DNA from: Phallusia mammillata
Lineage: Eukaryota
Length of the DNA stretch: 64,000 bases
Assembly: GCA_965637545.1 (NCBI GenBank)
Contig: OZ281499.1
Coordinates: forward strand, 806,001 to 870,000
Reading direction: 5' to 3'
The notes under the pieces are model-generated. The model saw only the letters and a program-made list of their open reading frames with translations. It ran no database searches and was not told the DNA's origin. Position numbers and translations under genes: made by a program. Below are positions 46,885 through 64,000 of this stretch, piece by piece (positions within the stretch are counted from its first letter, which is position 1; each line of letters starts with the position of its first letter).

Positions 46885-49800
46885 TTAAGACATGTAGGTT
46901 CGAATGGCCTCCTTGATTTTCTTGCGGCACATTGGACACTTACGTACTGACGAAGCGCATTGGTCGCAACAACAAAGGTGACCACACGGCACAAATACAA
47001 TGTCGGCCAAACGCTCCAAACAGATTTTACATCGCCGTTCGTCCTGAAGTTCAGCAATGCGAGCTTGCATTGAAGAGCTTGTACCTGTGGACGAATACAA
47101 TGATTTTACACATGATATCAATTATTCAAATAACCAAAATAGAAGGGTAAAACATTGCGCACCATGGTATGATTTTACTAAATCATTACTTAGATTTATA
47201 TTTTACCACAGAATTAAAAAGGTTTCAATTAAAACAAATATCATTGCTCCTACATTAAAAAGAGCATCAGCAGCATGTTATGCTGTACAGGCGCTCCAAC
47301 AGATGACACATTCAATAAAACAGTGATTTTTATGCTTGGATATCCTTTTGCACACTAGGTTCATATAAATGGGCATGAATATGCAAATTTAATGCTCGGG
47401 TCAATTTGTGCAACTGCTCGGCCGAGTACCGAGCATCAAAAACAGCGATGCTCGGTACCGAGTACTCGGGTTCTGGCTCGGCTCGGCCCATCCCTAGCAT
47501 ATGCAGTAAACCTTGGTTAATCCGGATCTTCACCCAATTCAGACAAAACTTTAGGTGCAAATGATTTGTAATGTGGCAAGATTTTATTGTGCAATTGATT
47601 TTCAATGCAATTTTTGTTACCATGTTATTAGAACACTGTGTTTAAGCAAACACTACATGTAAGCTTACCTTGTTCCTCCACTGACTGGCTCGGCACAGAA
47701 GCTAAACATGAAACGGTTGCACAGTTACAAAAAGTTTTTATATCTTTTTAAAACTACTTTTTTCAACAAGTCTAATTACGGACGGTATCAACTGTATTTG
47801 AAACAATGGTGAAATTTATTCTTGTAACACAGTGGTTCCCAAACTTTTTCATATTTTTTTCAAAACGGTCCCTTTGCCATTATTTCGAGGGCTCGCGGTC
47901 CTTAAGCCTAAATGTGTATTTCATTTAAACGAAAGTTAATTGCAGGATTTTAGCTGGTTGTGCAAAATTGAGCATAACAATCATCCAAAGACAGCATATG
48001 ACATCACAAACAGGACAAAAACATTACATTTGTGCGTGAAAAATCGCATTTTTGATAGTTGTTATCTAATAAAAGCCATTGTTTAGCAATGGAGACAGTT
48101 GATTCTCAATTCTACTTTGATTTAACTTATTTAGTGGCACAAACTGACGCCAAATAAGATTATAGAATTATTTCACCCGCTTCGCGGTCCCCCAAAAATT
48201 GTCTCACGGACCCCTAAAGGACCAAGGCCCCAGTTTGGGAACCGCTGTTGTAACACAATTAATAAAAAAACTAGGAGCAAACCCATTTTCAATAGCACAC
48301 AAGTAATTTCAGGCAAGGCACTCTGGTTATAGCATTGATATTTAAAACAAAACCATCTTGCATTTTAGTGTGTTTAATTTAGGTACAGTGCAGAATAATT
48401 TTTAATAATAAAACGCCAAAAATGTAATTTCACACTTTCCTAAGCAGGAGTACCACATTTTTTTGCCACTATTAATCACAGTTTTGGTAATAAAATGAAA
48501 TGGTTTTGGTAATAAAATGAAATGGTACTTTTTGCACACCACAAAAATTTTGCTAACTTTGTACATTGTTTATTCAACCCAAAAACATTTTCAATTTGTC
48601 ACCGGTTAAAAACCTCCACATTAGGCAGCAGAAAAGAAAAAAAAATGTTTTATTGCGCCACCTGGTGGTTGTGACTCCATTGGTTCTTCCTCATTTTCAC
48701 TGTCAGAGTTCCGTGAAGCTTCATCGGAAGTTAAATCGCTCACCAAATCCTCGACTGTGCTGTACATTGCACTGCGCCGGAGTCGACTGCATTAAAACAA
48801 GTTTCTGTTAAAATTAAGTAAGTAGAGTCAGAGTAAAAAAATCAGCAAACTACAAGTATAGGTTAAGAAAAATGGCTTCAAGACTTTTCCACAAACTACC
48901 AACCGCCTAAAATTTCGGAGTCTGCTGCAATAAAACAGGTGTAAGTCAGAAATAGGAAAGTAACATAAGTTTAATGAAGAAAATAACGGCCCAAATAGAT
49001 GTAAAAAGCAACATGCGTTATTTTTCTGATGCAGCCTTATATCACTGATAATGGCATGAGCATTTGCCGAAACGTTTAAAAAGTAAAGCATGTCACTTCT
49101 TGCGTATATTTGGGCTGTTATTTTCATTATTAAACTTATGAACGGATCCGTATGTAGTGTTCCAAAGAAAAGTAACATTACAGTATGTCAAGTACAAAAC
49201 AAACTGGTTTTAGACTTTTCCAGAACCACACACAGCTTAAATTAATGAGTAAAATGTAAATTATTACGATGCACAGCATTTGGATTGGGCAAGTAAACAC
49301 ACTGCATGACAACTGTCAAAATAAGAAACTAATGTAACAGGGTCAGAGTAAAAAGTCAGCAAATTACAAATATAATTTAAAAAGAATGGCTTCAAGACTT
49401 TCCCAAAAACTTTTAACAACCTAAAACCACAAGTAAAATTTCTATAAGTAGGGCATTCAGATAAAGTAAAACAAATTAACACACCGCTTGACAACTCGTC
49501 GAATCAGGGGAAGTTCAAATCCAATTTCGAGAGCCCTTGCAACAATGTCAGATTGCATTGCAGTGTTTACTTGTTCATCCTCGCGACGCAATTCCTCCTA
49601 CGGATAAATAATATTTCTTTATACTGCAACTAAGCAATGCATGGAAATATATTTGGTCACAATGTCCATTGTTTCATTGTTTTCCAAGTGTAAAAGTGCT
49701 TTCTTGATTGTTTAGACGTTTTTTACCTCAAATAGATACAGAAGCGTTATGTATGGATGACGACTGACAATGTGATGAAAACTGCTAAGCCTTAAAACAT

Positions 49801-52800
49801 TTGCTACATAATTCAATCTTCAATTGATAAACCAACTATGTTTCACAATTTTGACAAAGTCTACATTCTAAAACACTGTTTAATGTAAAGGCATAGATGA
49901 TAGTCTAGCACAGGGGTGGCCAACCCGCGGCTCGCGAGCCGCATGCGGCTCTTTGCCTGGTTTCATGCGGCTCTAGGTTGTTGTCGAAGTTTGGGGCCAC
50001 TGCGGATATCTTGGTTAGTTTGAGGCGATCTGGTATGGAAATCGTTAAATTTGAAGTATAGCTATGACAATTTTGCTTGCCTTGAAACTGCAACCTTATG
50101 TGGCAAATGACTTGATTATGATGACAAATATTCAATTGTTGAACAATGAATGATTGCTCATTGTTGCGTACAATGCGAATGAGACACAAAGCAACAGCAA
50201 TATTGCAACGTGTTCCAAAATAAATAACAATCCATTGTTTTTCGGGTTATGATGAACTTACAAGTCACTATTATGTTGGTGTGCGTTTTAGAATAAATCT
50301 AGCTAAGCACAGGTCTCTGTGTGTAAGGAAATGAACATGTGTGCCCATGTGTATAATGCGGCTCTTTGTGGTAACACAGTAAAAAATTTGGCTCTTAGGC
50401 TTTGACCGGTTGGCCATCCCTGGTATAGCATCTACTATTCTTGTCTTAATAGGTCAGAATTAAAAACAAATGGTCACAACCGCACTGGATCTTCAGAAGG
50501 CAATGTGCATATATAATTTATAAGGTGACGACAATGCCCATTGTAAACCTTATAAAAACTTTATTGTTTACACCTTTTTTAACCCCCAGTATATAAAGTG
50601 AGTCTACTGCAATGCATATTATCAAACAAATCAGAATAAAACAGCTTGCCTGTGGGTCAATGATTTGTGGGGGCGGGGTGGGGGCGCGGCCGAACTGTTG
50701 TCTCCTTTCACCTTCCATCGGAACCGGGGGAACATCATAGTTACCTCGCATTGGGGGTCGGGGTAAATTGGGAAACAGAGAGACCATGCGATGGACAAAA
50801 TCAGGTCCCTTTCGCTGCAGCAGGAACTCGCATCTGAAGTTGTATATAGGTCAAAGGTCGGGTCAAAATCCCACTAACGTTTTGAACAAGTAAACTTACG
50901 TTGGAAACCACTTTGCATGTTCTGTCCAGGGTTCATCTTGTGGATCCCAGTTTTGTAAACCCCCATTGCAATACCAACATTTTACTCTGTCGCGCTCTCC
51001 TTTAACGCATAGAGATGTTTGACACAAGGTACAGTACAATGTTGCCTTAATCTTTGTTTGTATTTGAATAAACTCTTGAAGAATTAGACCAGGGTCAGTC
51101 AAAAATTAGGCACAAGGTACAGTGTATTGTTATATTGTCGCTGCTTCTTCAAATTGAATAACATTTTATAAACATAACACTTCAGCCGTCCACCTAGGAA
51201 AAGGCCTTGTGTCCCTGTACTAAGGATTCTGCCCTTGGCCAAGTAAACTGTACAAGCTTTGAAAGAAAAAGACTTTCAAGAGTATGTTGCAGAGCAAAAT
51301 TCGAAAGAATTGATTTGTTTGGTAAATTTGATCGCCATAAACAGGCGGAAACTAGTGGATACCCAAAGATATATTAAATTAAACTCATTGCAAACAGAGA
51401 TCATATATATATTCAAAGCAAAACAAATTCACACTAGGTGGCACCACTCACCCAGAAAGAAGAATCCAGCTCTTGCTATTTGTCGAGGAGTCGCATCAAC
51501 ATTGTTGGCATTCCAACGATGGTCGAAAGTTTCAAATCTTACATCTTCATTTCTCATGTGAGGATTTACTGGGAATTGACACTGGAACATGTTTCTTAAG
51601 TCCCTCTGTCATAAACATATATGTATACGTTGGAATCCGCAAAACAACTTTTTTGTTGGTACCCAAGTGTCAACAGCCCTAACACAGTAAGAGCAGTGGT
51701 TCTGAACTAGTTTCAGGCCATAGACCACCAGTTCAAATAAATTAATAGCGGGCACCACTTGAGTAAGTGTACAGAAAAGATCCATAACAATTAACAAGCA
51801 TAGTGACTATATTCCTTTAACGGTAGAATTTCTATGAGTGATATTAAGTAAGTGACAGCTAACAATAAATACCCAACAACTTGAAGAAACTTGCTTTTGT
51901 ACTGAATATTCAACAAATTGTCTGCAACTAATTCCAGTTTATCACCAAATATAATTAACGTCCTGTGGACCACATAAAAAAGTTATTACAGACCACCAGT
52001 TGAGAACCACTAAGTAAGAGTGTTCTGAGATCACCACATACCCTAACAGTCGGAATAAAAAAGTGCATTGCTATAACTGCATCAAAAAATACATAGATTT
52101 GCAATGAGGCTTGTCGTCAAACAACAAACTCACACACAGGCATTTTCGGCTCACCAAGCATACAAACAAACGACAACACTCCGTAATTGCTTCACAGACA
52201 AATATACAAAAGTGAAATCTAGTTCACCTAAACTACCTGTTCATTTTCTGATGGATCTGGAGGTTCTTCGAAAATATTTTGTTGTCGTGGCACTGCTGCT
52301 CTCTCAGCCTCAGTAAGAACAACATTTCGTTCCTCTGCTCCTTGAACCAATCTGTGTGGACAGGATGATAGGTAAATATTTTATCATGGAGTTCAAAGCC
52401 TTGAATGCCTAATAGGGTTTTTATTGTCTGTATATAGGTCAAACGCCCCAGGACCAGTGGGATTCACAATCACAGCTCTCAGGGCAGCATGCGGCTCCCA
52501 ACACCTCATTTTGTGGCTCGCACCAGACCTCAGAAAACCACCAAAGATTGCTACTAGCTTTCAAGGTTATAATCTTTAGTGATTATTCTGAGGTCTCATT
52601 TTTGCGGCTCCCGACACACTTAAAAAACTACCATTTGGCCCCGACAATCAAAAAAGGTTGAGAACTGCTACCCTAGACTAGACCATTCAGCCAAGCTCAT
52701 GCCCAAAGGTAAATTTTCTTACTGTTGTGATCAGTTTTATTGTTATAGTTTTACAGGTTTGGCAAGTTACAGTCAGCAAGCCGGGCCAGAAACAATATTT

Positions 52801-55800
52801 CAACCAATCAGTCTTTATTTCAACCAATGTTTTTTATCCTGTTGACAAATTTAGAAGAATAACTCTCCATGCCTAAAAATGTGGGCATATAGCAAAAGTC
52901 TGTATTAACAGACCCATTACAGATATTTTACCACTGGTTAAAATCTCGGCTCCAGGAGTGTATTACAGTCAACCACAGTTAAACTGGTTTGAGGTAATCC
53001 AGGTCTTCTCCTAATTTGTACAATTGTTTTTTTGATTGAACAGGGTTTACTGTGGTTAACATATATTACAATACAATAGAGGTGCCCTGTCAGAGTCTGA
53101 CGTCGGCGACAATCAAATGTTCCTGTCTTTCCATACACTTCCGGATGATGTCCAGCGGCAATTTGCCTGTGACACGTGATAGCCATCCAAGATAAGTCAT
53201 ACGCTGCCGACCACGATCTCTTCGCCCCTCCACCTTTCCGGTGAGCACCAGATGTTCCAATTGCTTCTTACGAAGCACGTGACCGAGAAATCGAACCTGT
53301 CTCATGACGATGGACTGCATCAATTGCCTTGTTGTTGCAGCCCGCTGCAGCACCGCGTCATTTCGCACCTTCTGCGTCCAGGGTATGCGTATCATTCTTC
53401 GCAGAAACCACATTTCCGCTGCCTCCAGGCGATTCTGCGTCGTTTGGCTGATGGTCCAACACTCACAGCCATATACGAGAACTGACCACACGTAGCATTT
53501 CAAGAGTCGAAGTCTTGTTGCAATGCTGATCGAGCGAGAGATCAGAACGCTTTTCATGTTTTTGTAGGCAGTTTTTGCAATTCCAATGCGCCTGCGGATA
53601 TCTATGTCACACTTTCCTGTCGATGTTAATATGCTGCCCAAGTACTGGAACTGGCTGACCTGTTCCAGCACCTCTCCTTTCACTTTGATGTTGCACGTCG
53701 GCGTGACGGCCTTCTTGGAGAAAACCATCACGAAAGATTTTCTCTCATTGATGGTAAGCCCTATCATTTCGCTTTCCTCAACGGTCTTGTTTATCATGTT
53801 CTGTAGCTTTTCTTCTGTGCCGGCGATGAGTACAGTGTCATCGGCGTATCTCAGGTTATTAACATTTACCCCGCCAATGATAAAGCCCTTCAGCTCTTTG
53901 ATGTGGCGCATTATCATTTCCGTGTAAAGGGAGAACAGGTCTGGTGACATGATACACCCTTGCCTCACTCCGCGTTCGATGTTCACATACTCACTCAGCG
54001 CACCATCTATCCTTACTGCTGCCTGCTGGTCCCAGTACAGATTCTTGATCAATTCGATGTCCTTCCCATCGATGTCCAGTGTCTCCAACATTTCGATCAA
54101 CGGTTCATGTCTGACCTTATCAAACGCTTTTACATAATCGATGAAACAGGCACATATATCACGCTGCATTTCAATTGCTCGCTCCGTTATCATCCTCAAA
54201 ATGAAGATGGCATTCCGCATACCCTTATCGGGAGTGAACCCGTACTGCTCTTCGCTGACTTCTCCAGTCGTTCTGCCTCGGATGCGGTTAAGTAGGATCC
54301 GAAGGACAAGCTTTGTGAGGTGACTCATGAGGCTGATGGTTCTATGTTCTTCACATTTTGTGGCACCCGGTTTCTTTTGTAAGGTGATGAAAACGGATTT
54401 GCACATCTCCGCTGGAAAATGACCTTCGTCGTAAATTCGATTTGCTAGCTTTGTTATCGTTTCGATACCAAAATCAGCAAGAGCTTCAATCATTTCCATT
54501 GCGATCCCGTCCGGGCCAGTTGCTTTGCCTCTCGACATATATTACTCTCTTTAAATCCAAAATATTTCAACTATAACACAGTTTTTATTTTGCAAATCCT
54601 ACCATTTAGGCCAGAAGTATAGTTGGTCTACAACCACATCAAACAGTGGTTATAATCAGCAGTTTCCCATTGACACAGGTATGTATAAATTCATTCTAGT
54701 GTTTTACAATGTCTAGTTTGTAAATCTTTTGTTCCACTGCAGAACTGTTTGTTACGATCAAACATTATTTGATTGGGATTGTCAAAAAAACATTAGGGTT
54801 TTACAATCACCTGCAGTGTGGAAAGTGCCTTCTATGTTCAGCTTGTACGTTGTCACCATAATTCCAGTTGCGCAAAACTCCAGCACATGAAAAGCACTGA
54901 ACCCGGTCAAGGTTTCCCAAGTAGAAGAATCCTGACCTTGCAAGGTCGTTCGAACTCACTGTCGGTGTTTCGTTCGGCCAGTGTTCGAAAGTTCGACTGA
55001 ATGGAAAACATAACAAGATCCAACAAAAAACCAGGAAGGGTGACTTAGCACCACTTGCCATTGCACATACAGTATGGCCTACTTCAAAACCTATATTCTA
55101 TTATTTCCTACACCTATTTTATATTGGGTCCCATAACAGCCAAAGTTTTATACCCTTTGTTTGTTTTGCTAGGTCTCCCACCCATGTAAATGATGCATTT
55201 AAGAGATAATTGTGATAAATTTTGAATAAAAATCACAAGATCCAATAAAAAATTTAATTATAAAGTAGTTTGGATTTGAATCCCAAAAATTATAAATAAA
55301 ATATCTGTCTGATCAGTAATAACATTTAACATCTGTCCACTATAAAGCAGAAATTCATTGCTACTCATATGACATGAGTATTAACTAGCATTCAGCGACT
55401 CACATTCTTTCAGATTCTTTTCTTAAGTCCAAACTTTTCAGAAAGTGCTCATGATACGACGATGGTATGTTTGCAAACTCAACAATCTGAAACAAAACAT
55501 ACAAATAAAGCATGAAAATATTACATCAATGACTTCTACAGTTGAAGCATATTATAAGACCTGCAATGTAAATTTGCACAAAAAACACTAAATCACAAAT
55601 TACAAGTGAGAGGACGATTTAGGCATTAGACAAAATAAGTTTAATTGACAACTTCACAAAAAAATGTTTTAAAAACAGATTTTGTTTTTTTGAAACAAAT
55701 AATTTACAATTTTAAAAATGGGAAAAAACTGAACAGCTGGAAAGTGGAATATATGTTCATGTGTTTACTTATTGAGACGTCATTTCCGGTTTTGTTCAAA

Positions 55801-58800
55801 CAAACCCCTAGGGCAGGGGCGGGCAACTTCTTCAGTCGGCGGGCCTGATATGGGAAAATGAAGTACTTGGCGGGCCGGATTCCTGAATCGATACATTAAT
55901 CGCGTATTTATCCAGTGATTTACAACGGATTTTTGACCGCCTAAACCATATACAGTCAAGAACGTCACAATTACAATACAGTCCGAATAATCTAACTGAT
56001 ATAACATAAAATTATTAACCACAGCAAATTTACTGCATACACCACAGACTTAGATACTGCTGAAACACTAACTAGGCTACACGTGTGGAAACAAAGGAAA
56101 CCGTGAAAGCAGGCCACACACAAGGTAGGCAGTTATGCCGTAACAATGGACCTATGGTGAAATGGTAATAACGGCGGGAAAGTTTTTTGCTATTGGGGAG
56201 CGTTACTGTCCGATACAACAATAATTTGACGTAGTAAGCAAGTAGTGGGGAATTGCGGCAGACTGTGGCCGCGGGCCACATTATCATGTAAGACCGGTAA
56301 CTGCCTGCGGGCCACTCAAAATCCCGGGCCGTATGTTGCCCGTCCCTGCCCTAGGGTGTTGTTGTTTTAAGTTTTGCATATTGAGTTACAAATGATAAAT
56401 TAGCGATAAAGGTTAAACATGTGAAAAATGTCATTAAATGAAAATTACAGAATTATTCAAATGAAAAGAATAAAAAACTATTTTTAGATATCTCAAAGAA
56501 ATGAAATTTGAAAATCAGACATTAAAGTTTGTAGTCAAATTTTTTTGTTTGCTTTAAATTTTTATATTTCTTAATATCATAAAGTATACACCAAATTGTT
56601 AAACCCAAAGTTATGCTAGTTAATATTCTATGATTTTTATGGTTTTTATCATTGGCGGCATCTTGTCATAACTTCCTTTATTGGACAGAGAACCAGCTGT
56701 AGTCAGGTTATAAATGTTCAGTATAGGGTTACACAACCAAATAGTTAATTAGTGACAATAGAATGTGGTCAGCTCAATTTTACGGAAGAACCGAGATAAA
56801 AGGCAACTACCCTTTGAGTATTAAAACATGGAGACATAAGAAATCATAAAAAAGGTGTTTTGTGGATGCTGTATTCAGAAAAGCTGATGTACGTATTTGT
56901 GTGTTGAAAACTTTAAGCTAGTTACAAAACCTGTTTTCTGTAAATATTTATCGTTCAGTTGCTCAAGCACACAGATAGCCTGGTTTCGATTAGCTTAAGT
57001 AAGATTTTAAACTTTGTTCAACAGACCATAATGTAGTTTCACAGGCTACTGGCCTTAACTAAGCTGAACAAATAGTTTTAAAAATTGGCCATGGTGACAA
57101 TAAACTGTTGCTAAGCGTCACCGAACAACCTTTGTTAGTCAAGTAAAATTTGTTCAGCTCAATTTCATTTAAAAGGGCGAGACTTTATTCATAAAATACA
57201 AAAATAACAGTGTTGAAAAAAACAGGTTTTATGCTTTCACACAACGTAATACCACCAATTACCAACAGTATTAATCTTACTGTTAAACATTAGAACAGAA
57301 TTTAGCTGTTGCATAACAGGCAAATAGCAGTATTTATTAGTAAAACTTACATTATATATTGAAGCAGTTTGTCTTGGATGGGGTGCTGAATACACACCTT
57401 GGCCTGTGAACAATACAAGTACAACTTGTCCACTGTACAACAATGTTTACACCAAAACCTGAGTTTTGTTTACATTGGGGTAGGGCAAAATCAAATACTT
57501 GAAAATAAAGTGGCATAAATCCTAAGCCAGGTGTGTGCAACAGGCGGAAAAATTGTGTGGCCCTCGCTTGATGTCCGAAATTAGTTAAATGGCGCACCGA
57601 TGAAAAATGTTGCACACCCTGTGCTAAGTCAATATCGCCAGTAACTGCCTCATGTATATAAGTTTAAATTATCATTTTTTATCAAAGCAAGGCATAGTTA
57701 CATATTAGTCATAAACATATCAAAATAGCTGCAAACCAGGGTTAAGTAGTTGGGACTCCAGAGTAACATAGGCATAGCACAAAAGGTGGAGTCAAAGTTG
57801 TTTTAAAGTATTGTTTGAGTCTCAGTGGTGACGCTTTTGACCACATTCGACTTTTGGTACAATTTTGTTAAAAAAACAGCAAAACAATTTAAAAGGACAA
57901 CTAAATGTTTGGTTTTGCAGTCAATGTCATGAGATTTTTAACTGATTCAACAACCCTGCTGTACGCCTTCGATTCCCAGCTTAACCAGGCAAGATATATG
58001 ACTTCTATTTAAACCTACTTGCTGGTTGCCTTTCATTTCCTGGAGCGGGCATACTTTGTGCTCTTGGTGCTTGACTAGATGGCGCTGGGGAGCTGGTGAA
58101 GTTCGCAGATCTAGTCTGCAATTATAAAGGTATGCATAACAAAAAATGGATATTAAAAAAAAATGCAAGTCAAAAGTACATATAGAAAACAAAGTAATTA
58201 AATCAATCTAAACTTGTGCACTTCTTCGAAAATCTCGCATACATTTTTTTGTAAAATACATAAGATTATAGGGATGGGCTGAGCCGAGCCAGAAACCGAG
58301 TACTCCGTATCGAGCATCGCTGTTTTTAATGCTCGGTGCTCGGCCGAGCAGTTGCACAAACTGACCCAAGCGTTAAATTTGCACATTCATACTAACAAAC
58401 AAAACTTTTGTTTAAAAAGGTATACAAAAACAAAAATGACCGTTTATTTAAATGCATTATGATTGTAAAAAAAACGTGTCTTTCTAATGTAGGGCTGTAC
58501 AGCTTAACCTTAAAACACCAGTCGTAACGTAAGGGACTTTGTAAACCTAAAACTTGCGTGGAATAGGGAATGTTTGTGATGTCATAATGCACCCGAGCGT
58601 GCTCGGCTGAGCACAAAGCATTAACATGAGATGCTCAGTGCTCGTCCAAACGGAACACTTGCAGTTTTGGCCCATCCCTATAAGATAATATATTTAATAC
58701 AGCATAATCGTGTAATTTAGAAATTACTGAACAAGCATTTACTCCAGCACAATTGTGCTGCTATGCTGTAGATCATGGTGCAGTTTATGTAATATTTAGG

Positions 58801-61085
58801 TGTTCAGTCAAATTTATAGATATCTTTGCAAAAATGATGACATTCTTAATTAAACAATATGTTGGGGTATATTTTTTGCCAACTGGATGGAACACAAAAA
58901 CACCAAAAATTTTTTTAAACAAAGTGCAATTATTCACAAAAACATAAACTTCTTACACTAAAACTTGATGAGGGATTGAGAAACCTTGCCAGACCTCCTC
59001 CACCTGTTGAAAAACAGAGAAAAATACAATACCAACTTACGTGGGATATTGCATGCTTTAAACTGGAGTATGCACAAACATGTATGAAATTTGCAAGAAA
59101 CCATGATTGTCTGTAGCAGGGCTTAGATATTTCTCATTCTGTACCTTTTTTTAACAAAACAGTATGTGTATTTGTTTTTATCTGATCGAAGAACAGAACG
59201 TCTAAGTGTACACTACATCTAACCACAGGTGTTCAATTGCTCCACAGGAACTTAAGATAAATGCGTTTAATGTAAATGGGGACAAGCTAAAAACAACAGC
59301 ATTTCAATGAGAAATGTTTGATAGATTGTGTGCTAAACACACAAGTGGAGTATGCATCCAACTTGCAATCGAAAGGTTAGTGGTTCTAATCTCAAATTAA
59401 CCATTTAAATCACTCAGAAACAAATAAACAACAGTATATTTTGCTCTTGTATAGAGAAAGAAAAATGGAAAACTACACACAACATGTGCTGATGACATGA
59501 AAAATATAGCTATGCAGAGGCAGGATCCTTGTACTTACCAACTGGAACATTTCCGGAGTCAAGCCCTTTGAGGAACTTGCAGTCCTCCTGATGCCATCTC
59601 GCCGATCGGACATTGTCACCTGCCTCCCATTGTTCAACACATAAACCACAGCTGAGGAAAAACACAATGCTCAATGGAGGGCTTAAATGGATTGAAGCTA
59701 CTTAAAGCACAACTCAGGTAATAAATGGCCAACACTGCTGTTCTGCTTTAATAGGTACATGAATAGTGTTGCTACAGGAGCATATTTCTTAGAGTGTCTC
59801 GCCCAACAAATTAGGACATATATAATTCACTTTTACTCGTTATAACAGTGCTGAACATGTAAATAAAAATGTGTTGCAGTGTAACTTAACAATGACATCA
59901 TTCCAAAATGGAAACATTTTAAACATAACCACAGACAAGCAATTGCCACCATTATGACCATGTAATACATGTTTACACGAAATTCTTACATTAGCTGGTT
60001 TTTGAACCAGTGACTTCAAATTTAAAATGGTAACACACATTTTATGCATTTAATCTCTCAAATTTACCACACTTTAAAACTTTCTCACCATCCTTCAATA
60101 ACGATGTTGTTGAAAGTACAGTTCGCTTTTAATCATTTTCGATGTAACGACTTCTTTAACCAAAAGCCCTCACATGAGAAATGAAGTATAAGCAAACTGC
60201 AGAGGTGCATCATGAGTTTTGCATTTTAACAATACATGTACAAGCTAAAAGGGCAACTTGAAATCTAAACATAGTTATAAACAGTTTGTTGTTTCTCAAA
60301 CAACCATGTACTTTAAATAATAATGATGGCATCATGTTACAATATGCCATAATACTAAACAAAAACTGTAAAGCTGTTTTAAGAAATACTATGAACGTTT
60401 CTTATCACAAAAAAACTTCTACTTCAATATGCAAGACCACAAAGTTTTTACCTGAAACATTTAACCCGATCTTTGTATCCAGTATAATAAAAACCAGACG
60501 ATGCAAGATGACGTGGGTTGACTGGAATTTCCATCGGGAACTTCATGAAAGTTGAAAGTCGATAAGATTCAAGAAATGGATCGCCAGGAGGAATGTAGAT
60601 ACTCCGCTGGCCAGGTGGGTCTCGTTGCCTAAAAAGTGTCGCTTAATATCTTTCACTTTGGACACTATTTTTACCAGTCATATTGTATTTAGTACTGGCG
60701 TAACATAAATTCTAGTGTGAAAAACACATTCATTAAAAAGAAATAAAAAAATCATATCATGCAACAACTCTTCTTAAAAAAGATTAACAAACATTTTAAT
60801 CCACAACATTTTGACTTCAAACAAATTCACAGAAATGACACTTTTCATGAAACCCCAATTTTGTATCGAGGCACATCAAAAAAATGCTTTCACAATAATC
60901 CAAGCACATACCTTCAAAAATATAACAAGCAACCAACCTGTCATAAACAACTCCATCACTTGTCACCATTACAAGCTGGTTGGTATTTTGAAACTGATTT
61001 TTTGAAATGTGCCGACATTGCGTCTCTTTAAAAGTTTGAATCAACTGTTTGTGACATCTGGTTATAAACTTCTTTTTAGCTTGGT
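46885..61085 (-). CDS. Inhibitor of apoptosis (IAP/BIRC) protein, 3xBIR-UBA-RING (XIAP-like architecture, no CARD seen)
   Basis: Phase-consistent exons 61085-60938, 60628-60452, 59651-59539, 59003-58957, 58115-58019, 57403-57351, 55486-55404, 54996-54811, 52351-52237, 51605-51452, 50999-50900, 50833-50650, 49597-49485, 48786-48662, 47701-47669, 47084-46885. BIR2 CFSC..H..FPHC, BIR3 CWYC..HAKWFPTC, UBA (ALEIGF...LVSDL), C-terminal RING CKIC..CGH..C..C..CPMC. First in-frame ATG in this span is at 60969. Confidence 0.9.
47830..48247. mobile_element. hAT MITE
   Basis: CAGTGGTTCCCAAACT ... AGTTTGGGAACCGCTG; perfect TSD TTGTAACA. Confidence 0.92.
48960..49100. mobile_element. Penelope-like end, third family (related copies at 30340-30470 and 40400-40520)
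   Basis: CTGATAATGGCATGAGCATTTGCCGAAACG at 49045-49074 plus the shared flank GAAG..ATAACG.CCCAAATAGA.GTAAAAAGC.ACATGC. Confidence 0.55.
49911..50422. mobile_element. hAT MITE
   Basis: CAGGGGTGGCCAACC ... GGTTGGCCATCCCTG; TSD GTCTAGCA/GTATAGCA. Confidence 0.9.
51694..52012. mobile_element. hAT MITE
   Basis: CAGTGGTTCT ... AGAACCACTA; perfect TSD AGTAAGAG. Confidence 0.85.
53070..54534 (-). mobile_element. 5'-truncated RTE-clade non-LTR retrotransposon (RT domain) in an IAP intron
   Basis: Uninterrupted RT frame with GVRQG, LRYADD and the RTE-type C-terminus; short ATTGT-repeat tail; 11-bp TSD ACATATATTAC at 53059-53069 and 54535-54545. Confidence 0.93.
55814..56348. mobile_element. hAT MITE
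   Basis: CAGGGGCGGGCAAC ... GTTGCCCGTCCCTG; perfect TSD CCCTAGGG. Confidence 0.92.
57528..57621. mobile_element. Very short hAT MITE (94 bp)
   Basis: CAGGTGTGTGCAACA ... TGTTGCACACCCTG; TSD 6/8. Confidence 0.65.
58269..58680. mobile_element. hAT MITE (TAGGGATG TIR); partial relatives near 47370-47496 and 62198-62290
   Basis: TAGGGATGGG ... CCCATCCCTA; TSD TAAGATTA/TAAGATAA. Confidence 0.88.
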
Positions 61086-61266
61086 CTGAATAAAAAAATA
61101 AAAAGTACATTAAACTATAATAATTATTGTATACTTGTATGGCCCAGGGATATGTACAGTAACACATATTTTTAAAATTTTAAAAATATTTTAGTTAAAT
61201 ACAAAAATTAAAATGCAATTATAAGCTTTTGACATAAACACAAAAGAATATGTAGCGTTACAGTCG

Positions 61267-63655
61267 TCAAAGCCGAGCAAAAAAGTTAGCCAGTGGTGGG
61301 ATTTCAACCCACAACCTCAGCCTTTGTGAAGCTGCTAACAATACTGCAGCAATAAAATAAATAATGCTGCTGGTTTGTTTGAGCTTCCCCTCACCTTTTT
61401 TCTGGGAAATTAAATATTCATGAAGCATTTCAAACTTTTCCTGATAAAAATCTGTTTCATTTTGTCTTGACATTGCCTGTAGTAGAGGCCACCTTTTCTC
61501 ATTTAACAGCTGGCAAAGTATTGCTATTATTTTGTGCTTATCCTTGAAATCCCAATCCGGTAGATCCCTAAAATCTTGGAGTGATTGATAGTTAATAATA
61601 TGCAAAGCTGCCAACAATGCATCATCTCTGCAAAATTGTTCCAGGTTAGGTAACCTCGAAAAAGAATCCTTGCAAAGTTTTTTTAAACATTCAAATGTAA
61701 TGTTTTTTGCTTTACAAAATCCTTGGCAGCAGGTGTGGATGAGAGCAATGTACGAAAACCTGTTGTATATGAATGCAACAATGTTTTCAACTGAATCCAC
61801 CCAATTGTCAGTAAGAAATCCAATCTTTTTTTTGTAATGTTGAAATTCAAAATAGCAAAAATCACAAGAAACATCGTTCTCATCTTCAGTATAAATGCAA
61901 CTTTGCAAACCTAAAGAAAAGAATCAGGTAAAATTTCTTTTGACCAAGCGAGTGAAACTAGAATGTTTCAAATATTGCTAATTTATATGTTAATATTTTT
62001 CTGTTTATGGCTATCTACATAAATTCTTAGCATTTTTTGCAACTAATATACGTTTGTGACCTAATTCAGAATGGAATCCATGTCTTTACATGACACATAC
62101 CTGAAGCACAAACAAATGGGCACCCACACACATATACATGTATGGTTAAAACATATCATCATTTCATTTTTTAAATGTAAAAAGCTGGGATTTCTAGTAG
62201 GGATGTGTCAAAACGGCAAATGTTCTGTTTGGTCGAGCACCAAGCATGGCATGTTAATGCTCGGTGCATTGTGATGTTACAAACATTCGTAATTCCACGA
62301 CAGTTTTGTAGATTTCCAAGGTGTCTTATGTCACCAGTGTTGTATTAAGCTATACAGACCCAAGTCTGAAAGAGAGTTTTTCATGCCATAGCGCATTAAA
62401 AAACAGTCATTCTAGTCAATCAATAGTCCAGTAAAATTGTCTCCCAATCGTCCATTGTTTAACATTTTGACCACTGGAGGTGTTTTGAGCAACAACAATT
62501 GATGTTTATGGCTGCATATAGCTGTTAACACCCCCCTAACTGCTATCTGCAAAAACAGCCACCACTTAATCCAATAAGATTACAAAAATAAGTGACCAGG
62601 TTGCCTTTGAAACACTAAACACGGCTAGCGGTTTAAATATCGGGGTTATCAAATGAAAAGATGCAGACGGCACATCTACATACCTATTTCTACCTTCTGT
62701 AAAAGTTTCATCCAACTCCACAAAATATTTTATGGCAAAAGAGGGTGGAAAAACTGCAGGGTAGAAAACAAACATACAATAAAGTTAAAGCATAATGTGT
62801 CTCCTTCAGGGACGTAGAACCATAACAAGAAATAAGCCATACATTTAACATATACCTTTAGTAATTCGTCTCTTCAATTTTAACTTTGCCAATGATTTGG
62901 AAAGAGTAGTTTTACCAATGCCAACTTGTCCAACTATTCCAATACAATTTGGATGGGAGGTTTGACCTATCATTTCATCAATGGAAACAAAGCGTTTATG
63001 AAAAAGAGAACCCAATTCCTGTTTTGTAGGTATGAATTCCTCTTTTTCCACAAGACCCCATCTTTTATATGACTTGTACACATGTATTCCTGGATCTACA
63101 TCAGGTAGTTGGTTGGCCTTCAGTTCTTTGTCATAAAGTACCACTTGAAAGCTCTTCACATGCTCATCCTGATACTTTTTAATAGCAGCAACTGAAATAA
63201 AAATGCAGGCTTTAGGCTGTAAACTAAAACAGCCAATGTCATTGCGTCACTTGTCAAAGCGAGAACTAATAGTTTCAGGGAAAGGGACCTGTAAAAACCT
63301 AACCAGTGCACAACTGCACAATCGTATCTACTAGCTATAGATTTAAATCCAAATTCATTTCATTGTATAAGTATGTGTAATTGGTAATGCTAAAAAGAAG
63401 CAACATTAAAATGGCCTTTCACTTTATTCTGGTATATTTCAACCTTACAAAGAAAGTATATCCCAGACTAAAAACTACTGACTAATGTTTTAATTACAGC
63501 CTAAACACGATTTAAAGTAGCAATTTAATTTGGCTAAAGTTTTATGAACATAACAATTAACTTACGACATGACTTCACTAAAATACACTTTTCTTCACAA
63601 ACATCATTCCCATTATGTTTGGCTTGTACACAATCGTCTGTTACATGTTCTTCAT
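61267..63655 (-). CDS. Partial gene continuing off the right edge, with a NACHT/STAND-type P-loop (Walker A) exon
   Basis: Exons 63655-63566, 63191-62856 (CIGIVGQVGIGKTTLSK), 62753-62694 (or 62684), 61910-61395 (or read-through to the stop at 61267). No recognisable Walker B, so the NTPase may be truncated or degenerate. Confidence 0.6.
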
Positions 63656-64000
63656 CTAAATAATTAAAGACTTCATTAAAAAGCTAAGTGCTTCTGGTTA
63701 GCTTCAATTTTAAGTAAGTTGCATTATTTGAAAGACAAAAATGAAGACTTTTTACATAAAACACAACCAAAAATGAGTGATTCAGTCATCTTTACAGTCG
63801 AGTGCGTCAACAAACCAGCCAAACAGATTAATGGAATTAGCTTAAACACATAGAATATTTTGCATTTAAACAATCAGTGGGTGTCACATTTGGCTGTTTT
63901 TTGGTCAAGTACACTTTGTTTGTTTTTATATAATCAGTTTTTTTGTGGTCACACTCACACCGCACTTAAAGTCTGATACTCGCCAAGACTTGTGATGATA

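What the first reader, a model, noticed from the sequence alone, without database searches (positions are those of the whole stretch)
46885..63655. NACHT-type P-loop exons run in frame into a 3xBIR-UBA-RING IAP: fusion gene or operon
Seen: a phase-consistent path of 20 exons (2930 nt) from 63655 to the IAP stop. The Walker A exon (GQVGIGKTT) ends in phase 1, 62753-62694 is 1-1, 61910-61395 ends at a strong AG|GTGAGG phase-1 donor, and 61085-60938 is open and converts phase 1 to the phase 2 needed by the BIR1 exon. Known: NAIP is BIR-NACHT-LRR without RING, so P-loop first then BIRs and RING would be a different architecture. Alternative: the upstream gene stops at 61267 and the IAP (Met 60969) is a downstream cistron about 180 nt later, as in SL trans-spliced tunicate operons. 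The 62694 donor is weaker than one 10 nt away at 62684.
Basis: partly seen in the sequence, partly recalled or inferred. Interest (0 to 1): 0.8.

Follow-up and report, generated by a model that had tools for sequence, protein, structure and literature searches.

The report
IAP gene with captured NLR exon
A sea-squirt cell-death regulator gene (an IAP ubiquitin ligase) really is spliced in frame to an upstream exon carrying a P-loop, but that exon is only a broken-off piece of an immune-receptor (NLR) gene, so this is exon capture and not a new working NACHT-IAP machine.

Summary
RNA-derived contigs from four runs (two studies) show the minus-strand GT..AG junctions, including the key 61395>61085 junction. 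My 20-exon model gives one open frame of 967 aa, or 947 aa without the cassette exon.

The interpretation needs revising in three ways.

1. Exons D (61910-61395) and E (61085-60938) are not NACHT-gene exons. D-like and E-like exons with the same intron phases precede the BIR1 exon in four other IAP paralogs on this chromosome. A public Phallusia mammillata protein model joins D, E and BIR1. So 61395>61085 is an ordinary internal intron of a lineage-specific IAP subfamily, not a fusion point or an operon boundary.
2. Only exon B (63191-62856) is NLR-derived. It matches the first ~105 residues of the NACHT exon of about 30 NACHT-LRR paralogs. Homology stops 17 residues after GKT. There is no Walker B, sensor 1, winged helix or LRR anywhere in the window.
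3. The cassette exon (62753-62694) lies inside a dispersed repeat and is skipped in two runs.

The real chimeric junction is 62856>61910. The 5' end of the gene lies beyond the window. Another reader of this scan had already flagged the helical D domain elsewhere on this chromosome. Interest is moderate to low.

The parts
63566..63655 (-). Exon A (90 nt). It is open in frame with no ATG. Position 63655 follows an acceptor AG. The origin of this exon is undetermined.
   Evidence: Joint 63566>63191 in 4 runs. The contigs continue 27-172 nt further 5', outside the window. No counterpart was found in IAP or NLR paralog flanks.
62856..63191 (-). Exon B (336 nt). It is an NLR-derived fragment: the pre-NACHT region plus beta1, Walker A and alpha1. 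Walker A (GQVGIGKTT) is at 62905-62931.
   Evidence: 46-59% aa identity to the first ~105 residues of the 445-477 aa NACHT exons of about 30 paralogs. The paralogs score Pfam NACHT 76.5 bits, plus NOD2_WH and LRR_6. This exon scores only 12.2 bits.
62417..62828 (.). Dispersed repeat that abuts the truncated NACHT fragment. A second repeat lies at 62196-62365.
   Evidence: More than 2700 first-look candidates genome-wide, with copies 67-81% identical (84% for the second repeat). It also matches introns around the NLR paralogs. RNA contig depth is very high here.
62694..62753 (-). Cassette exon C (60 nt, phase 1-1), exonized from the dispersed repeat. It is optional.
   Evidence: Included in X2 (joint 62856>62753) and skipped in X1 and X5 (joint 62856>61910). 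It lies inside the repeat. The alternative donor at 62684 would frameshift.
61395..61910 (-). Exon D (516 nt, 172 codons). It encodes the helical N-terminal 'D domain' specific to one IAP subfamily. It has no known family or fold.
   Evidence: There are five members genome-wide, and each lies upstream of an IAP gene's BIR exons (four of them 0.55-1.25 kb from a detected BIR1 exon). No Pfam, PDB, atlas or 1.84-billion-protein hit. AF2 pLDDT 43 and 52, all helical. No Foldseek match.
60938..61085 (-). Exon E (148 nt). A linker exon of the IAP subfamily that ends ..DGVVYD + AG|gt in phase 2. It contains Met 60969.
   Evidence: Joints 61395>61085 and 60938>60628. Paralogs L035 and L036 have E-like exons starting G|AC and ending ..DGNIYD + AG|gt. 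P0002 joins D, E and BIR1.
59539..60628 (-). BIR1, split over exons F (60628-60452) and G (59651-59539). It has non-canonical zinc-ligand spacing, C-x2-C-x18-H-x3-C.
   Evidence: Pfam BIR E 9e-9. Joints. Spacing read from the translation.
55404..59003 (-). Linker exons H (59003-58957), I (58115-58019), I2 (57403-57351) and J (55486-55404).
   Evidence: The H exon and the start of I are confirmed by joints. I2 and J are inferred from splice sites and frame, and the length of the X2 contig fits them.
54811..54996 (-). Exon K, BIR2.
   Evidence: Pfam BIR E 6e-21. The protein is 100% identical to the tandem neighbour's BIR2.
53093..54541 (-). Open 483-aa reverse-transcriptase ORF of a retroelement, in the intron between BIR2 and exon L. 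It is not part of the coding path.
   Evidence: Pfam RVT_1 E 6e-34.
50900..52351 (-). Exon L (52351-52237), and BIR3 over exons M (51581-51452) and N (50999-50900).
   Evidence: Pfam BIR E 3.5e-12 on N. Splice sites and frame. Not read-checked.
48662..50833 (-). Exon O (50833-50650, with a GC donor), and the UBA domain over exons P (49597-49485) and Q (48786-48662).
   Evidence: The neighbour IAP2 has CAG|GTAAAT at the site homologous to our CAG|GCAAGC. Pfam UBA_BIRC2-3 is weak, E 0.021, on P alone.
46885..47701 (-). Exon R (47701-47669) and the RING exon S (47084-46888), with the stop at 46887-46885.
   Evidence: Pfam zf-C3HC4_3 E 6e-16. Frame.

Best explanation
This is one gene. It is a member of a lineage-specific ascidian IAP subfamily with the layout helical D domain, E linker, BIR1-3, UBA, RING. 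In other words, it is an XIAP-like RING E3 ligase with an orphan N-terminal extension.

In this copy alone, a ~375-bp piece of an NLR gene now sits upstream of exon D and is spliced in as coding exon B. The piece comprises the 3' end of an intron with its acceptor, plus the first quarter of the NACHT exon up to 17 residues past the Walker A lysine. The fragment is followed directly by a dispersed repeat. A GT just past the end of the NLR homology serves as its donor. Part of the repeat is an optional cassette exon.

What is shown:
- the transcript structure from exon A to the exon after BIR1
- the open frame
- the NLR origin and truncation of exon B
- the IAP-subfamily origin of exons D and E

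What is inferred:
- The protein is translated from a start in an unseen 5' exon.
- The isolated P-loop has no NTPase activity, because the rest of the fold is missing.
- The protein works as an ordinary BIR/RING IAP whose N-terminus has been remodelled.
For: - RNA contig joints and through-contigs.
- Open frame of 967 or 947 aa over 20 exons.
- Exon B is homologous to about 30 NACHT-LRR paralogs, and the homology ends at profile position 123 of 449. No further NACHT or LRR similarity exists anywhere in the window.
- A repeat starts 28 nt after the exon B donor and contains the cassette exon.
- A genome-wide search with one D-like ORF finds exactly five loci, each upstream of an IAP gene's BIR exons (four of them 0.55-1.25 kb from a detected BIR1 exon); E-values run from 1e-128 to 5.6e-3.
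- The paralogs have identical intron phases and boundary codons: G|AC at the start of E, and GAC AG|gt before BIR1.
- Public protein P0002 (annotated Phallusia mammillata BIRC3-like) runs from the D domain through E into BIR1 in one model. It is 87% identical to the neighbour IAP2's D exon.
- Exon B is absent upstream of the paralogs' D exons.
- Contig depths of the A-B part and the E-G part are similar within each run: 8.6 vs 9.8, 8.4 vs 7.5, and 5.4 vs 8.9 (a weak indicator).
- Exon B has stayed open, with only in-frame indels, at dS about 0.5-0.9 from its paralogs. Its dN is roughly doubled, with omega 0.38-0.77 against 0.30 among the paralogs.
Against: - No single contig or read spans from exon B to the RING exon. 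The A-B-D contigs and the D-E-F-G contigs overlap only within exon D.
- All RNA evidence comes from assembled contigs, which cannot show 5' ends, spliced-leader caps or rare isoforms.
- The start codon is unknown, because the 5' exons lie outside the window. Translation of the NLR-derived part is therefore not shown.
- Exons below 58050 rest on splice-site and frame logic and on paralog comparison only.
- Our exon D is the most divergent family member (20-29% identity; genome-wide E 5.6e-3), so its membership leans partly on position and exon structure.
- Whether the NLR fragment was inserted into an IAP intron, or an NLR 5' end was juxtaposed to an IAP that lost its own start, is unresolved.
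Confidence: 0.75

Rival explanations
1. A genuine new architecture: a working NACHT/STAND NTPase module fused N-terminally to a 3xBIR-UBA-RING IAP.
For: Walker A is intact (GQVGIGKTT) and in frame with the IAP. The transcript is real.
Against: - Homology to the NACHT exon stops 17 residues after GKT.
- Pfam NACHT scores 12.2 bits against a cutoff of 26.7.
- Exon D scores about 0 against the NLR paralog profile. It is predicted all-helical and belongs to an IAP-linked family.
- There are no LRR exons in the window.
Confidence: 0.03
2. Two cistrons, as in a tunicate operon. The upstream unit ends in the 61394-61086 interval (stop at 61267), and the IAP is made separately by spliced-leader trans-splicing at the 61085 acceptor, starting at Met 60969. 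The cis-spliced form would be a minor by-product.
For: Tunicates use SL trans-splicing and have operons (established knowledge). The 61085 acceptor is strong. Contig assemblies trim short SL tips, so an SL form cannot be excluded.
Against: - The cis-joint 61395>61085 appears in all three runs that cover it, and no contig lies in the intron.
- D|E|BIR1 with the same phases is conserved in four paralogs and in protein model P0002.
- Met 60969 is not conserved.
Confidence: 0.07
3. The chimera exists only at transcript level. Exons A and B (and possibly D) act as a long 5' leader or alternative first exons, and translation starts further downstream, for example at Met 60969. The NLR-derived peptide would then never be made.
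For: There is no in-frame ATG in exon A, and the first in-frame Met inside the window lies just before the P-loop. An out-of-frame mini-ORF, ATG AAG AAC ATG TAA, opens exon A. dN on exon B is elevated.
Against: - About 360 codons across four splice junctions remain open and phase-compatible.
- Exon B has kept its frame despite dS of about 0.5-0.9 from its paralogs.
- The paralogs' D domains are clearly coding.
- A candidate upstream exon supplies an in-frame ATG with a phase-1 donor ending in AG, as the contig ends require (L004 5573-5522). This exon is unverified.
Confidence: 0.15

Closest known systems
XIAP/BIRC4-type IAPs (BIR1-3, UBA, RING E3 ligases)
   Same: Three BIR domains, a UBA-like segment, a C-terminal C3HC4 RING, and no CARD seen between UBA and RING.
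   Different: It carries a ~360-380 aa N-terminal extension: unknown 5' exons, an NLR-derived P-loop fragment, an optional repeat-derived 20 aa, an orphan helical D domain and the E linker. BIR1 has non-canonical C-x2-C-x18-H-x3-C spacing. It belongs to an expanded ascidian paralog group; PMC13159474 reports 18 IAPs in Ciona intestinalis.
NAIP/BIRC1 (BIR x3, NACHT, LRR)
   Same: BIR repeats and NLR-derived sequence occur in one reading frame.
   Different: The order is reversed. There is a RING and no LRR. Above all there is no NACHT domain, only its first strand, P-loop and helix. PMC13159474 describes NAIP-like IAPs as gnathostome-specific, and this gene arose independently of them.
The genome's own NACHT-LRR (NLR) family, about 30 paralogs on contig C1 at 32.0-35.4 Mb
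   Same: Exon B shares the intron position, the acceptor and 46-59% aa identity over the first ~105 residues of their NACHT exon.
   Different: It is truncated before strand 2 and Walker B, has no LRR exons, and lies on a different chromosome inside an IAP gene.
Exon shuffling and exonization of transposable elements (for example Alu-derived cassette exons)
   Same: A foreign gene fragment and a dispersed repeat have become spliced, in-frame exons. The repeat-derived exon is alternatively included.
   Different: The donor of the shuffled exon is an immune-receptor gene and the recipient is a cell-death regulator. The fragment keeps its original acceptor.
Tunicate SL trans-spliced operons
   Same: The organism group is the same, and there is a strong acceptor at the start of exon E.
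   Different: The boundary in question is cis-spliced and is conserved as an internal intron in the paralogs.

Membership tests
IAP (BIR-containing) family, XIAP-like architecture | At least one BIR domain passing the Pfam threshold | tested here: met
   PF00653 scores 36.2, 75.2 and 47.1 bits on the three BIR exons, against a cutoff of 22.9.
IAP (BIR-containing) family, XIAP-like architecture | C-terminal RING finger | tested here: met
   PF13920 zf-C3HC4_3, 58.4 bits against a cutoff of 27.
IAP (BIR-containing) family, XIAP-like architecture | UBA domain between BIR3 and RING | tested here: inconclusive
   PF21290 scores only 15.3 bits (cutoff 27.2) on exon P alone. The domain is split over two exons and could not be submitted joined. 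By eye, the motif pattern matches the cIAP UBA.
NACHT / STAND NTPase | Walker A (P-loop) GxxxxGK[ST] | tested here: met
   GQVGIGKTT at 62931-62905.
NACHT / STAND NTPase | Pfam NACHT domain above the gathering score | tested here: not met
   12.2 bits against 26.7, and only profile positions 4-23 of 167 are matched. The paralogs score 76.5 bits.
NACHT / STAND NTPase | Walker B, sensor 1 and winged-helix segments following the P-loop | tested here: not met
   The paralog-profile match ends at position 123 of 449. Exon D scores -2.2 bits. tblastn of 12 paralog NACHT ORFs finds nothing else in the window.
NAIP-like / NLR | C-terminal LRR region | tested here: not met
   tblastn with four LRR exon peptides from a paralog locus gave no hit in the window.
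D-domain IAP subfamily of this genome (provisional) | A D-like helical exon upstream of BIR1, joined through an E-like exon with intron phases 1 and 2 | tested here: met
   Junctions confirmed by RNA contigs for this copy and by protein model P0002 for the neighbour copy.
Tunicate operon (upstream and downstream cistrons) | The upstream cistron terminates before the downstream gene, and the downstream gene receives a spliced leader at its acceptor | not testable with these tools
The observed cis-splice and the paralog conservation argue against it.

The most novel reading that the evidence does not exclude
The NLR-derived N-terminal segment is retained because it is useful. It comprises the ~85-residue region that precedes the NACHT core in about 30 NLR paralogs, plus the P-loop helix. 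As an integrated, decoy-like module it could let this RING E3 ligase associate with those NLRs or their partners and ubiquitinate them. That would couple an expanded NLR repertoire to IAP-mediated control in a tunicate lineage that PMC13159474 reports has lost Apaf-1 and caspase-9.
Probability: 0.07. Interest if true: 0.7.

Novelty: new variant of a known kind. Interest (0 to 1): 0.35.

Why it matters
The finding corrects what would otherwise be annotated as a striking 'NACHT-BIR-RING' protein. A P-loop motif in frame with an IAP does not make a STAND module.

What remains is a documented, transcribed example of exon capture between two expanded innate-immunity and cell-death gene families in a tunicate, together with a repeat-derived cassette exon.

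It also gives independent support, from exon structure, RNA contigs and a public protein model, for an ascidian-specific IAP subfamily with an orphan helical N-terminal domain. That subfamily is relevant to how tunicates rewired apoptosis control. The finding does not open a long-standing question.

Tried and rejected
1. Exon D as the diverged remainder of a STAND domain. It has a pairwise BLASTP hit (E 3e-7; genome-wide E 0.0087) to an ~880-aa STAND-like ORF on C1. A profile of 12 members of that family gives exon D a score of about 0, so I treat the hit as chance.
2. Cassette exon C as NACHT strand 2. By eye, FAIKYFVELD resembles FLLRFMDLNY. I rejected this because the exon lies inside a dispersed repeat with thousands of copies.
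3. A first-exon candidate ending ..AAGG|gt (L004 about 5452). I rejected it because the contig ends require an exon ending in AG. The same ORF has an earlier donor, TCAG|gt at L004 5522, that does fit. It is unverified.
4. Exon A as homologous to an upstream exon of the IAP paralogs (SDEERVFTDD in L035). The similarity is not significant. There is also no counterpart near the NLR paralogs.
5. Database searches for exons B and D. The word search found nothing. The atlas found nothing. The exhaustive search of 1.84 billion proteins found only a spurious repetitive protein.
6. Fold assignment of the D domain. AF2 pLDDT was 43 with a single sequence and 52 with a 5-sequence alignment. Foldseek against PDB gave no match with E<=0.001. 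Pfam and PDB sequence profiles gave nothing.
7. A loose contig end at 61762. It traces to an unrelated locus on C8 that shares an 18-nt identical stretch, so it is not an isoform.
8. The look-up of encoding contigs for P0002. The protein is not on record there.


Full report
**Setting**

The window is G000:C6:806001-870000 of a 240-Mb assembly. The closest public protein I found is annotated as from the ascidian Phallusia mammillata. Everything below is on the minus strand.

**Checking the observation**

Stop-to-stop translation and Pfam confirmed the domain content:
- three BIR domains
- a weak UBA match
- a C-terminal RING
- an intronic reverse-transcriptase ORF
- upstream, an exon with GQVGIGKTT that gives only sub-threshold Walker-A-level hits (NB-ARC, nSTAND3; NACHT 12.2 bits against a cutoff of 26.7)

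I found RNA-like runs of the same organism and laid four of them, from two studies, on 58050-64000. Their contigs match the genome with no mismatches.
- 63566>63191
- 62856>61910 (X1, X5) or 62856>62753 (X2)
- 61395>61085 (X1, X2, X3)
- 60938>60628 and 60452>59651
- two further small exons, 59003-58957 and 58115-..

Single contigs of 888 and 944 nt join exon D to exon E and to both BIR1 exons. Nothing covers the 61086-61394 intron. The exons D and E occur only once in the assembly, so a retrocopy does not explain these joined forms.

The concatenated exons are open in one frame, with the stated phases. I completed the model down to the stop at 46885. It has 20 exons and 2906 nt including the stop. 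The ORF is 967 aa, or 947 aa without the cassette exon. One intron is GC-AG, and its position is backed by a canonical GT at the same site in the neighbouring paralog.

Three additions to the observation:
- 63655 is an acceptor, not a start. Contigs carry up to 172 nt more 5' sequence that is not in the window.
- The 62753 exon is optional.
- The part below 58050 is not read-checked.

**What the P-loop exon is**

Exon B (63191-62856) has about 30 relatives, mostly on contig C1 at 32.0-35.4 Mb. There the homologous stretch opens a single 445-477-codon exon. That exon is a bona fide NACHT domain (Pfam NACHT 76.5 bits, NOD2_WH) and is followed by LRR_6 exons.

A profile of 12 paralogs matches our spliced protein only from the exon B acceptor to profile position 123 of 449. 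That point is 17 residues past GKT. Exon D scores nothing against this profile. tblastn with the paralog NACHT ORFs and with LRR exons finds nothing else in the 64-kb window.

Twenty-eight bases after the exon B donor, a dispersed repeat begins (62828-62417; more than 2700 first-look candidates genome-wide). The cassette exon 62753-62694 lies entirely inside it.

So the 'NACHT-type exons' reduce to one exon. It holds the pre-NACHT stretch plus strand 1, the P-loop and helix 1. It is cut off next to a repeat. The cassette exon is exonized repeat sequence.

Compared with its paralogs, exon B shows dS of about 0.5-0.9 and a roughly doubled dN, yet it remains open with only in-frame indels. This indicates relaxed constraint. 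It does not demonstrate neutral evolution.

**What exons D and E are**

Exon D (171 aa) has no Pfam match, no word-search hit, no atlas hit, and no real hit among 1.84 billion representatives. A tempting pairwise similarity to a STAND-like ORF was not supported by that family's profile.

The turning point was the IAP paralogs. The BIR2 exon has at least eight close relatives on C6, including a tandem neighbour only 3 kb beyond the window's left end. The neighbour, and three other paralogs at 3.41, 3.48 and 4.98 Mb, each have a 170-232-codon open frame 0.55-1.25 kb upstream of the BIR1 exon. These ORFs resemble exon D. A whole-genome search with one of them returns exactly these five loci, ours included (alignment A1).

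The exon structure is conserved:
- The D exon ends in phase 1.
- An E-like exon begins G|AC.
- The last E segment ends ..DG(N/V)(I/V)YD + AG|gt in phase 2.
- The BIR1 exon begins ..RDPPGQRS.

A profile search with A1 found a public 333-aa protein annotated 'BIRC3-like' from Phallusia mammillata. It runs from the D domain through an E-like segment into BIR1, and it is 87% identical to the neighbour copy's D exon.

Hence 61395>61085 is an ordinary internal intron of a lineage-specific IAP subfamily. It is neither a fusion point nor an operon boundary. The fold of the D domain remains unknown: it is predicted helical at low confidence, with no Foldseek, Pfam or PDB match. Another reader of this scan had independently flagged this helical domain at the 3.41-Mb cluster.

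**Where the real chimera is**

None of the paralogs has an exon-B-like sequence in the 5-7 kb upstream of its D exon. The copy-specific event is therefore the junction 62856>61910, seen in X1 and X5, which come from two different studies.

Two histories fit the data:
- The NLR fragment, with its own acceptor, landed in a 5' intron of the IAP gene and was exonized.
- An NLR 5' end was juxtaposed to an IAP copy that lacks its own start. Unlike the L035 and L036 D exons, ours has no ATG near its beginning.

Exon A has no detectable relative on either side, so I cannot choose between the two.

**How it most likely works**

The protein is most likely an XIAP-like RING E3 ligase with a remodelled N-terminus. 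A Walker A loop without strands 2-5, Walker B and sensor 1 cannot form a P-loop NTPase core, by established knowledge of the fold. I therefore infer that the fragment has no nucleotide-dependent switch function.

Whether the fragment is translated at all depends on the unseen 5' exon. One candidate, L004 5573-5522, satisfies the constraints but is unverified. It is one of only two candidates within 18 kb that combine an in-frame ATG, a phase-1 donor and an exon ending in AG, as the contig ends require.

If the cassette exon uses the stronger 62684 donor, that isoform is non-productive, with a stop 11 codons later.

**Comparison with known systems and novelty**

NAIP has the order BIR-NACHT-LRR and, according to PMC13159474, is gnathostome-specific. 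PMC11508797 describes ascidian NLRs as NACHT-LRR without an N-terminal effector domain, which matches the paralogs seen here. PMC13159474 also reports lineage-specific IAP expansion in Ciona (18 IAPs) and frequent architectural remodelling of RING IAPs.

Against that background, this gene is a new variant of a known kind: an IAP paralog that has captured an NLR exon fragment and a repeat-derived cassette exon. It is not a new class of STAND-IAP protein.

**Limits**

- All RNA evidence comes from assembled contigs, so there is no information on 5' ends, SL caps or minor isoforms.
- No single molecule is shown to span from exon B to the RING exon.
- The 3' two-thirds of the gene model is inferential.
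- No relatives' genomes were available to date the capture.

Noticed in passing
window 59539-60628 (BIR1, exons F and G): BIR1 has the zinc-ligand spacing C-x2-C-x18-H-x3-C instead of the canonical C-x2-C-x16-H-x6-C. BIR2 and BIR3 are canonical.
   Followed up: partly
G000:C6:792663-803027 (window -13337..-2973; loci L033, L034, L044): A tandem IAP paralog lies on the same strand just left of the window. Its BIR2 protein is 100% identical and BIR3 is 94% identical at nucleotide level, but BIR1 is only 74% and the D domain 23% at protein level. This patchy identity suggests gene conversion of the BIR2/BIR3 exons after an old duplication.
   Followed up: partly
window 53093-54541 (-): An uninterrupted 483-aa reverse-transcriptase ORF (RVT_1, E 6e-34) of a retroelement sits in the intron after BIR2, on the same strand as the gene.
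   Followed up: no
G000:C1 31.99-35.44 Mb (for example L006, L011-L019): A large cluster of about 30 NACHT-LRR genes, each with a single 445-477-codon NACHT exon. Several pairs give identical scores, which suggests very recent segmental duplicates (for example 33283192/33455409 and 33329193/33493226).
   Followed up: partly
L008/L020-L031 (C1:19.15 Mb, C2:29.5 Mb, C3:20.69 Mb, C6:19.3-19.4 Mb, C8): A second family of at least 14 STAND-like genes with ~670-930-codon single-exon ORFs. They have a P-loop (GxPGxGKSE), Walker-B-like and GxP-like motifs, but only sub-threshold Pfam hits (nSTAND6, AAA_16).
   Followed up: partly
window 49598-50649: The intron between exons O and P appears to use a GC donor (CAG|GCAAGC). 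The neighbouring paralog has CAG|GTAAAT at the same position.
   Followed up: partly
window 58249-58447 and 62030-62830: Very high contig depth in the RNA runs (hundreds, against about 8 for the exons) marks expressed dispersed repeats inside introns of this gene. 58269-58454 is also an inverted copy of 47309-47496 (81% identity).
   Followed up: no
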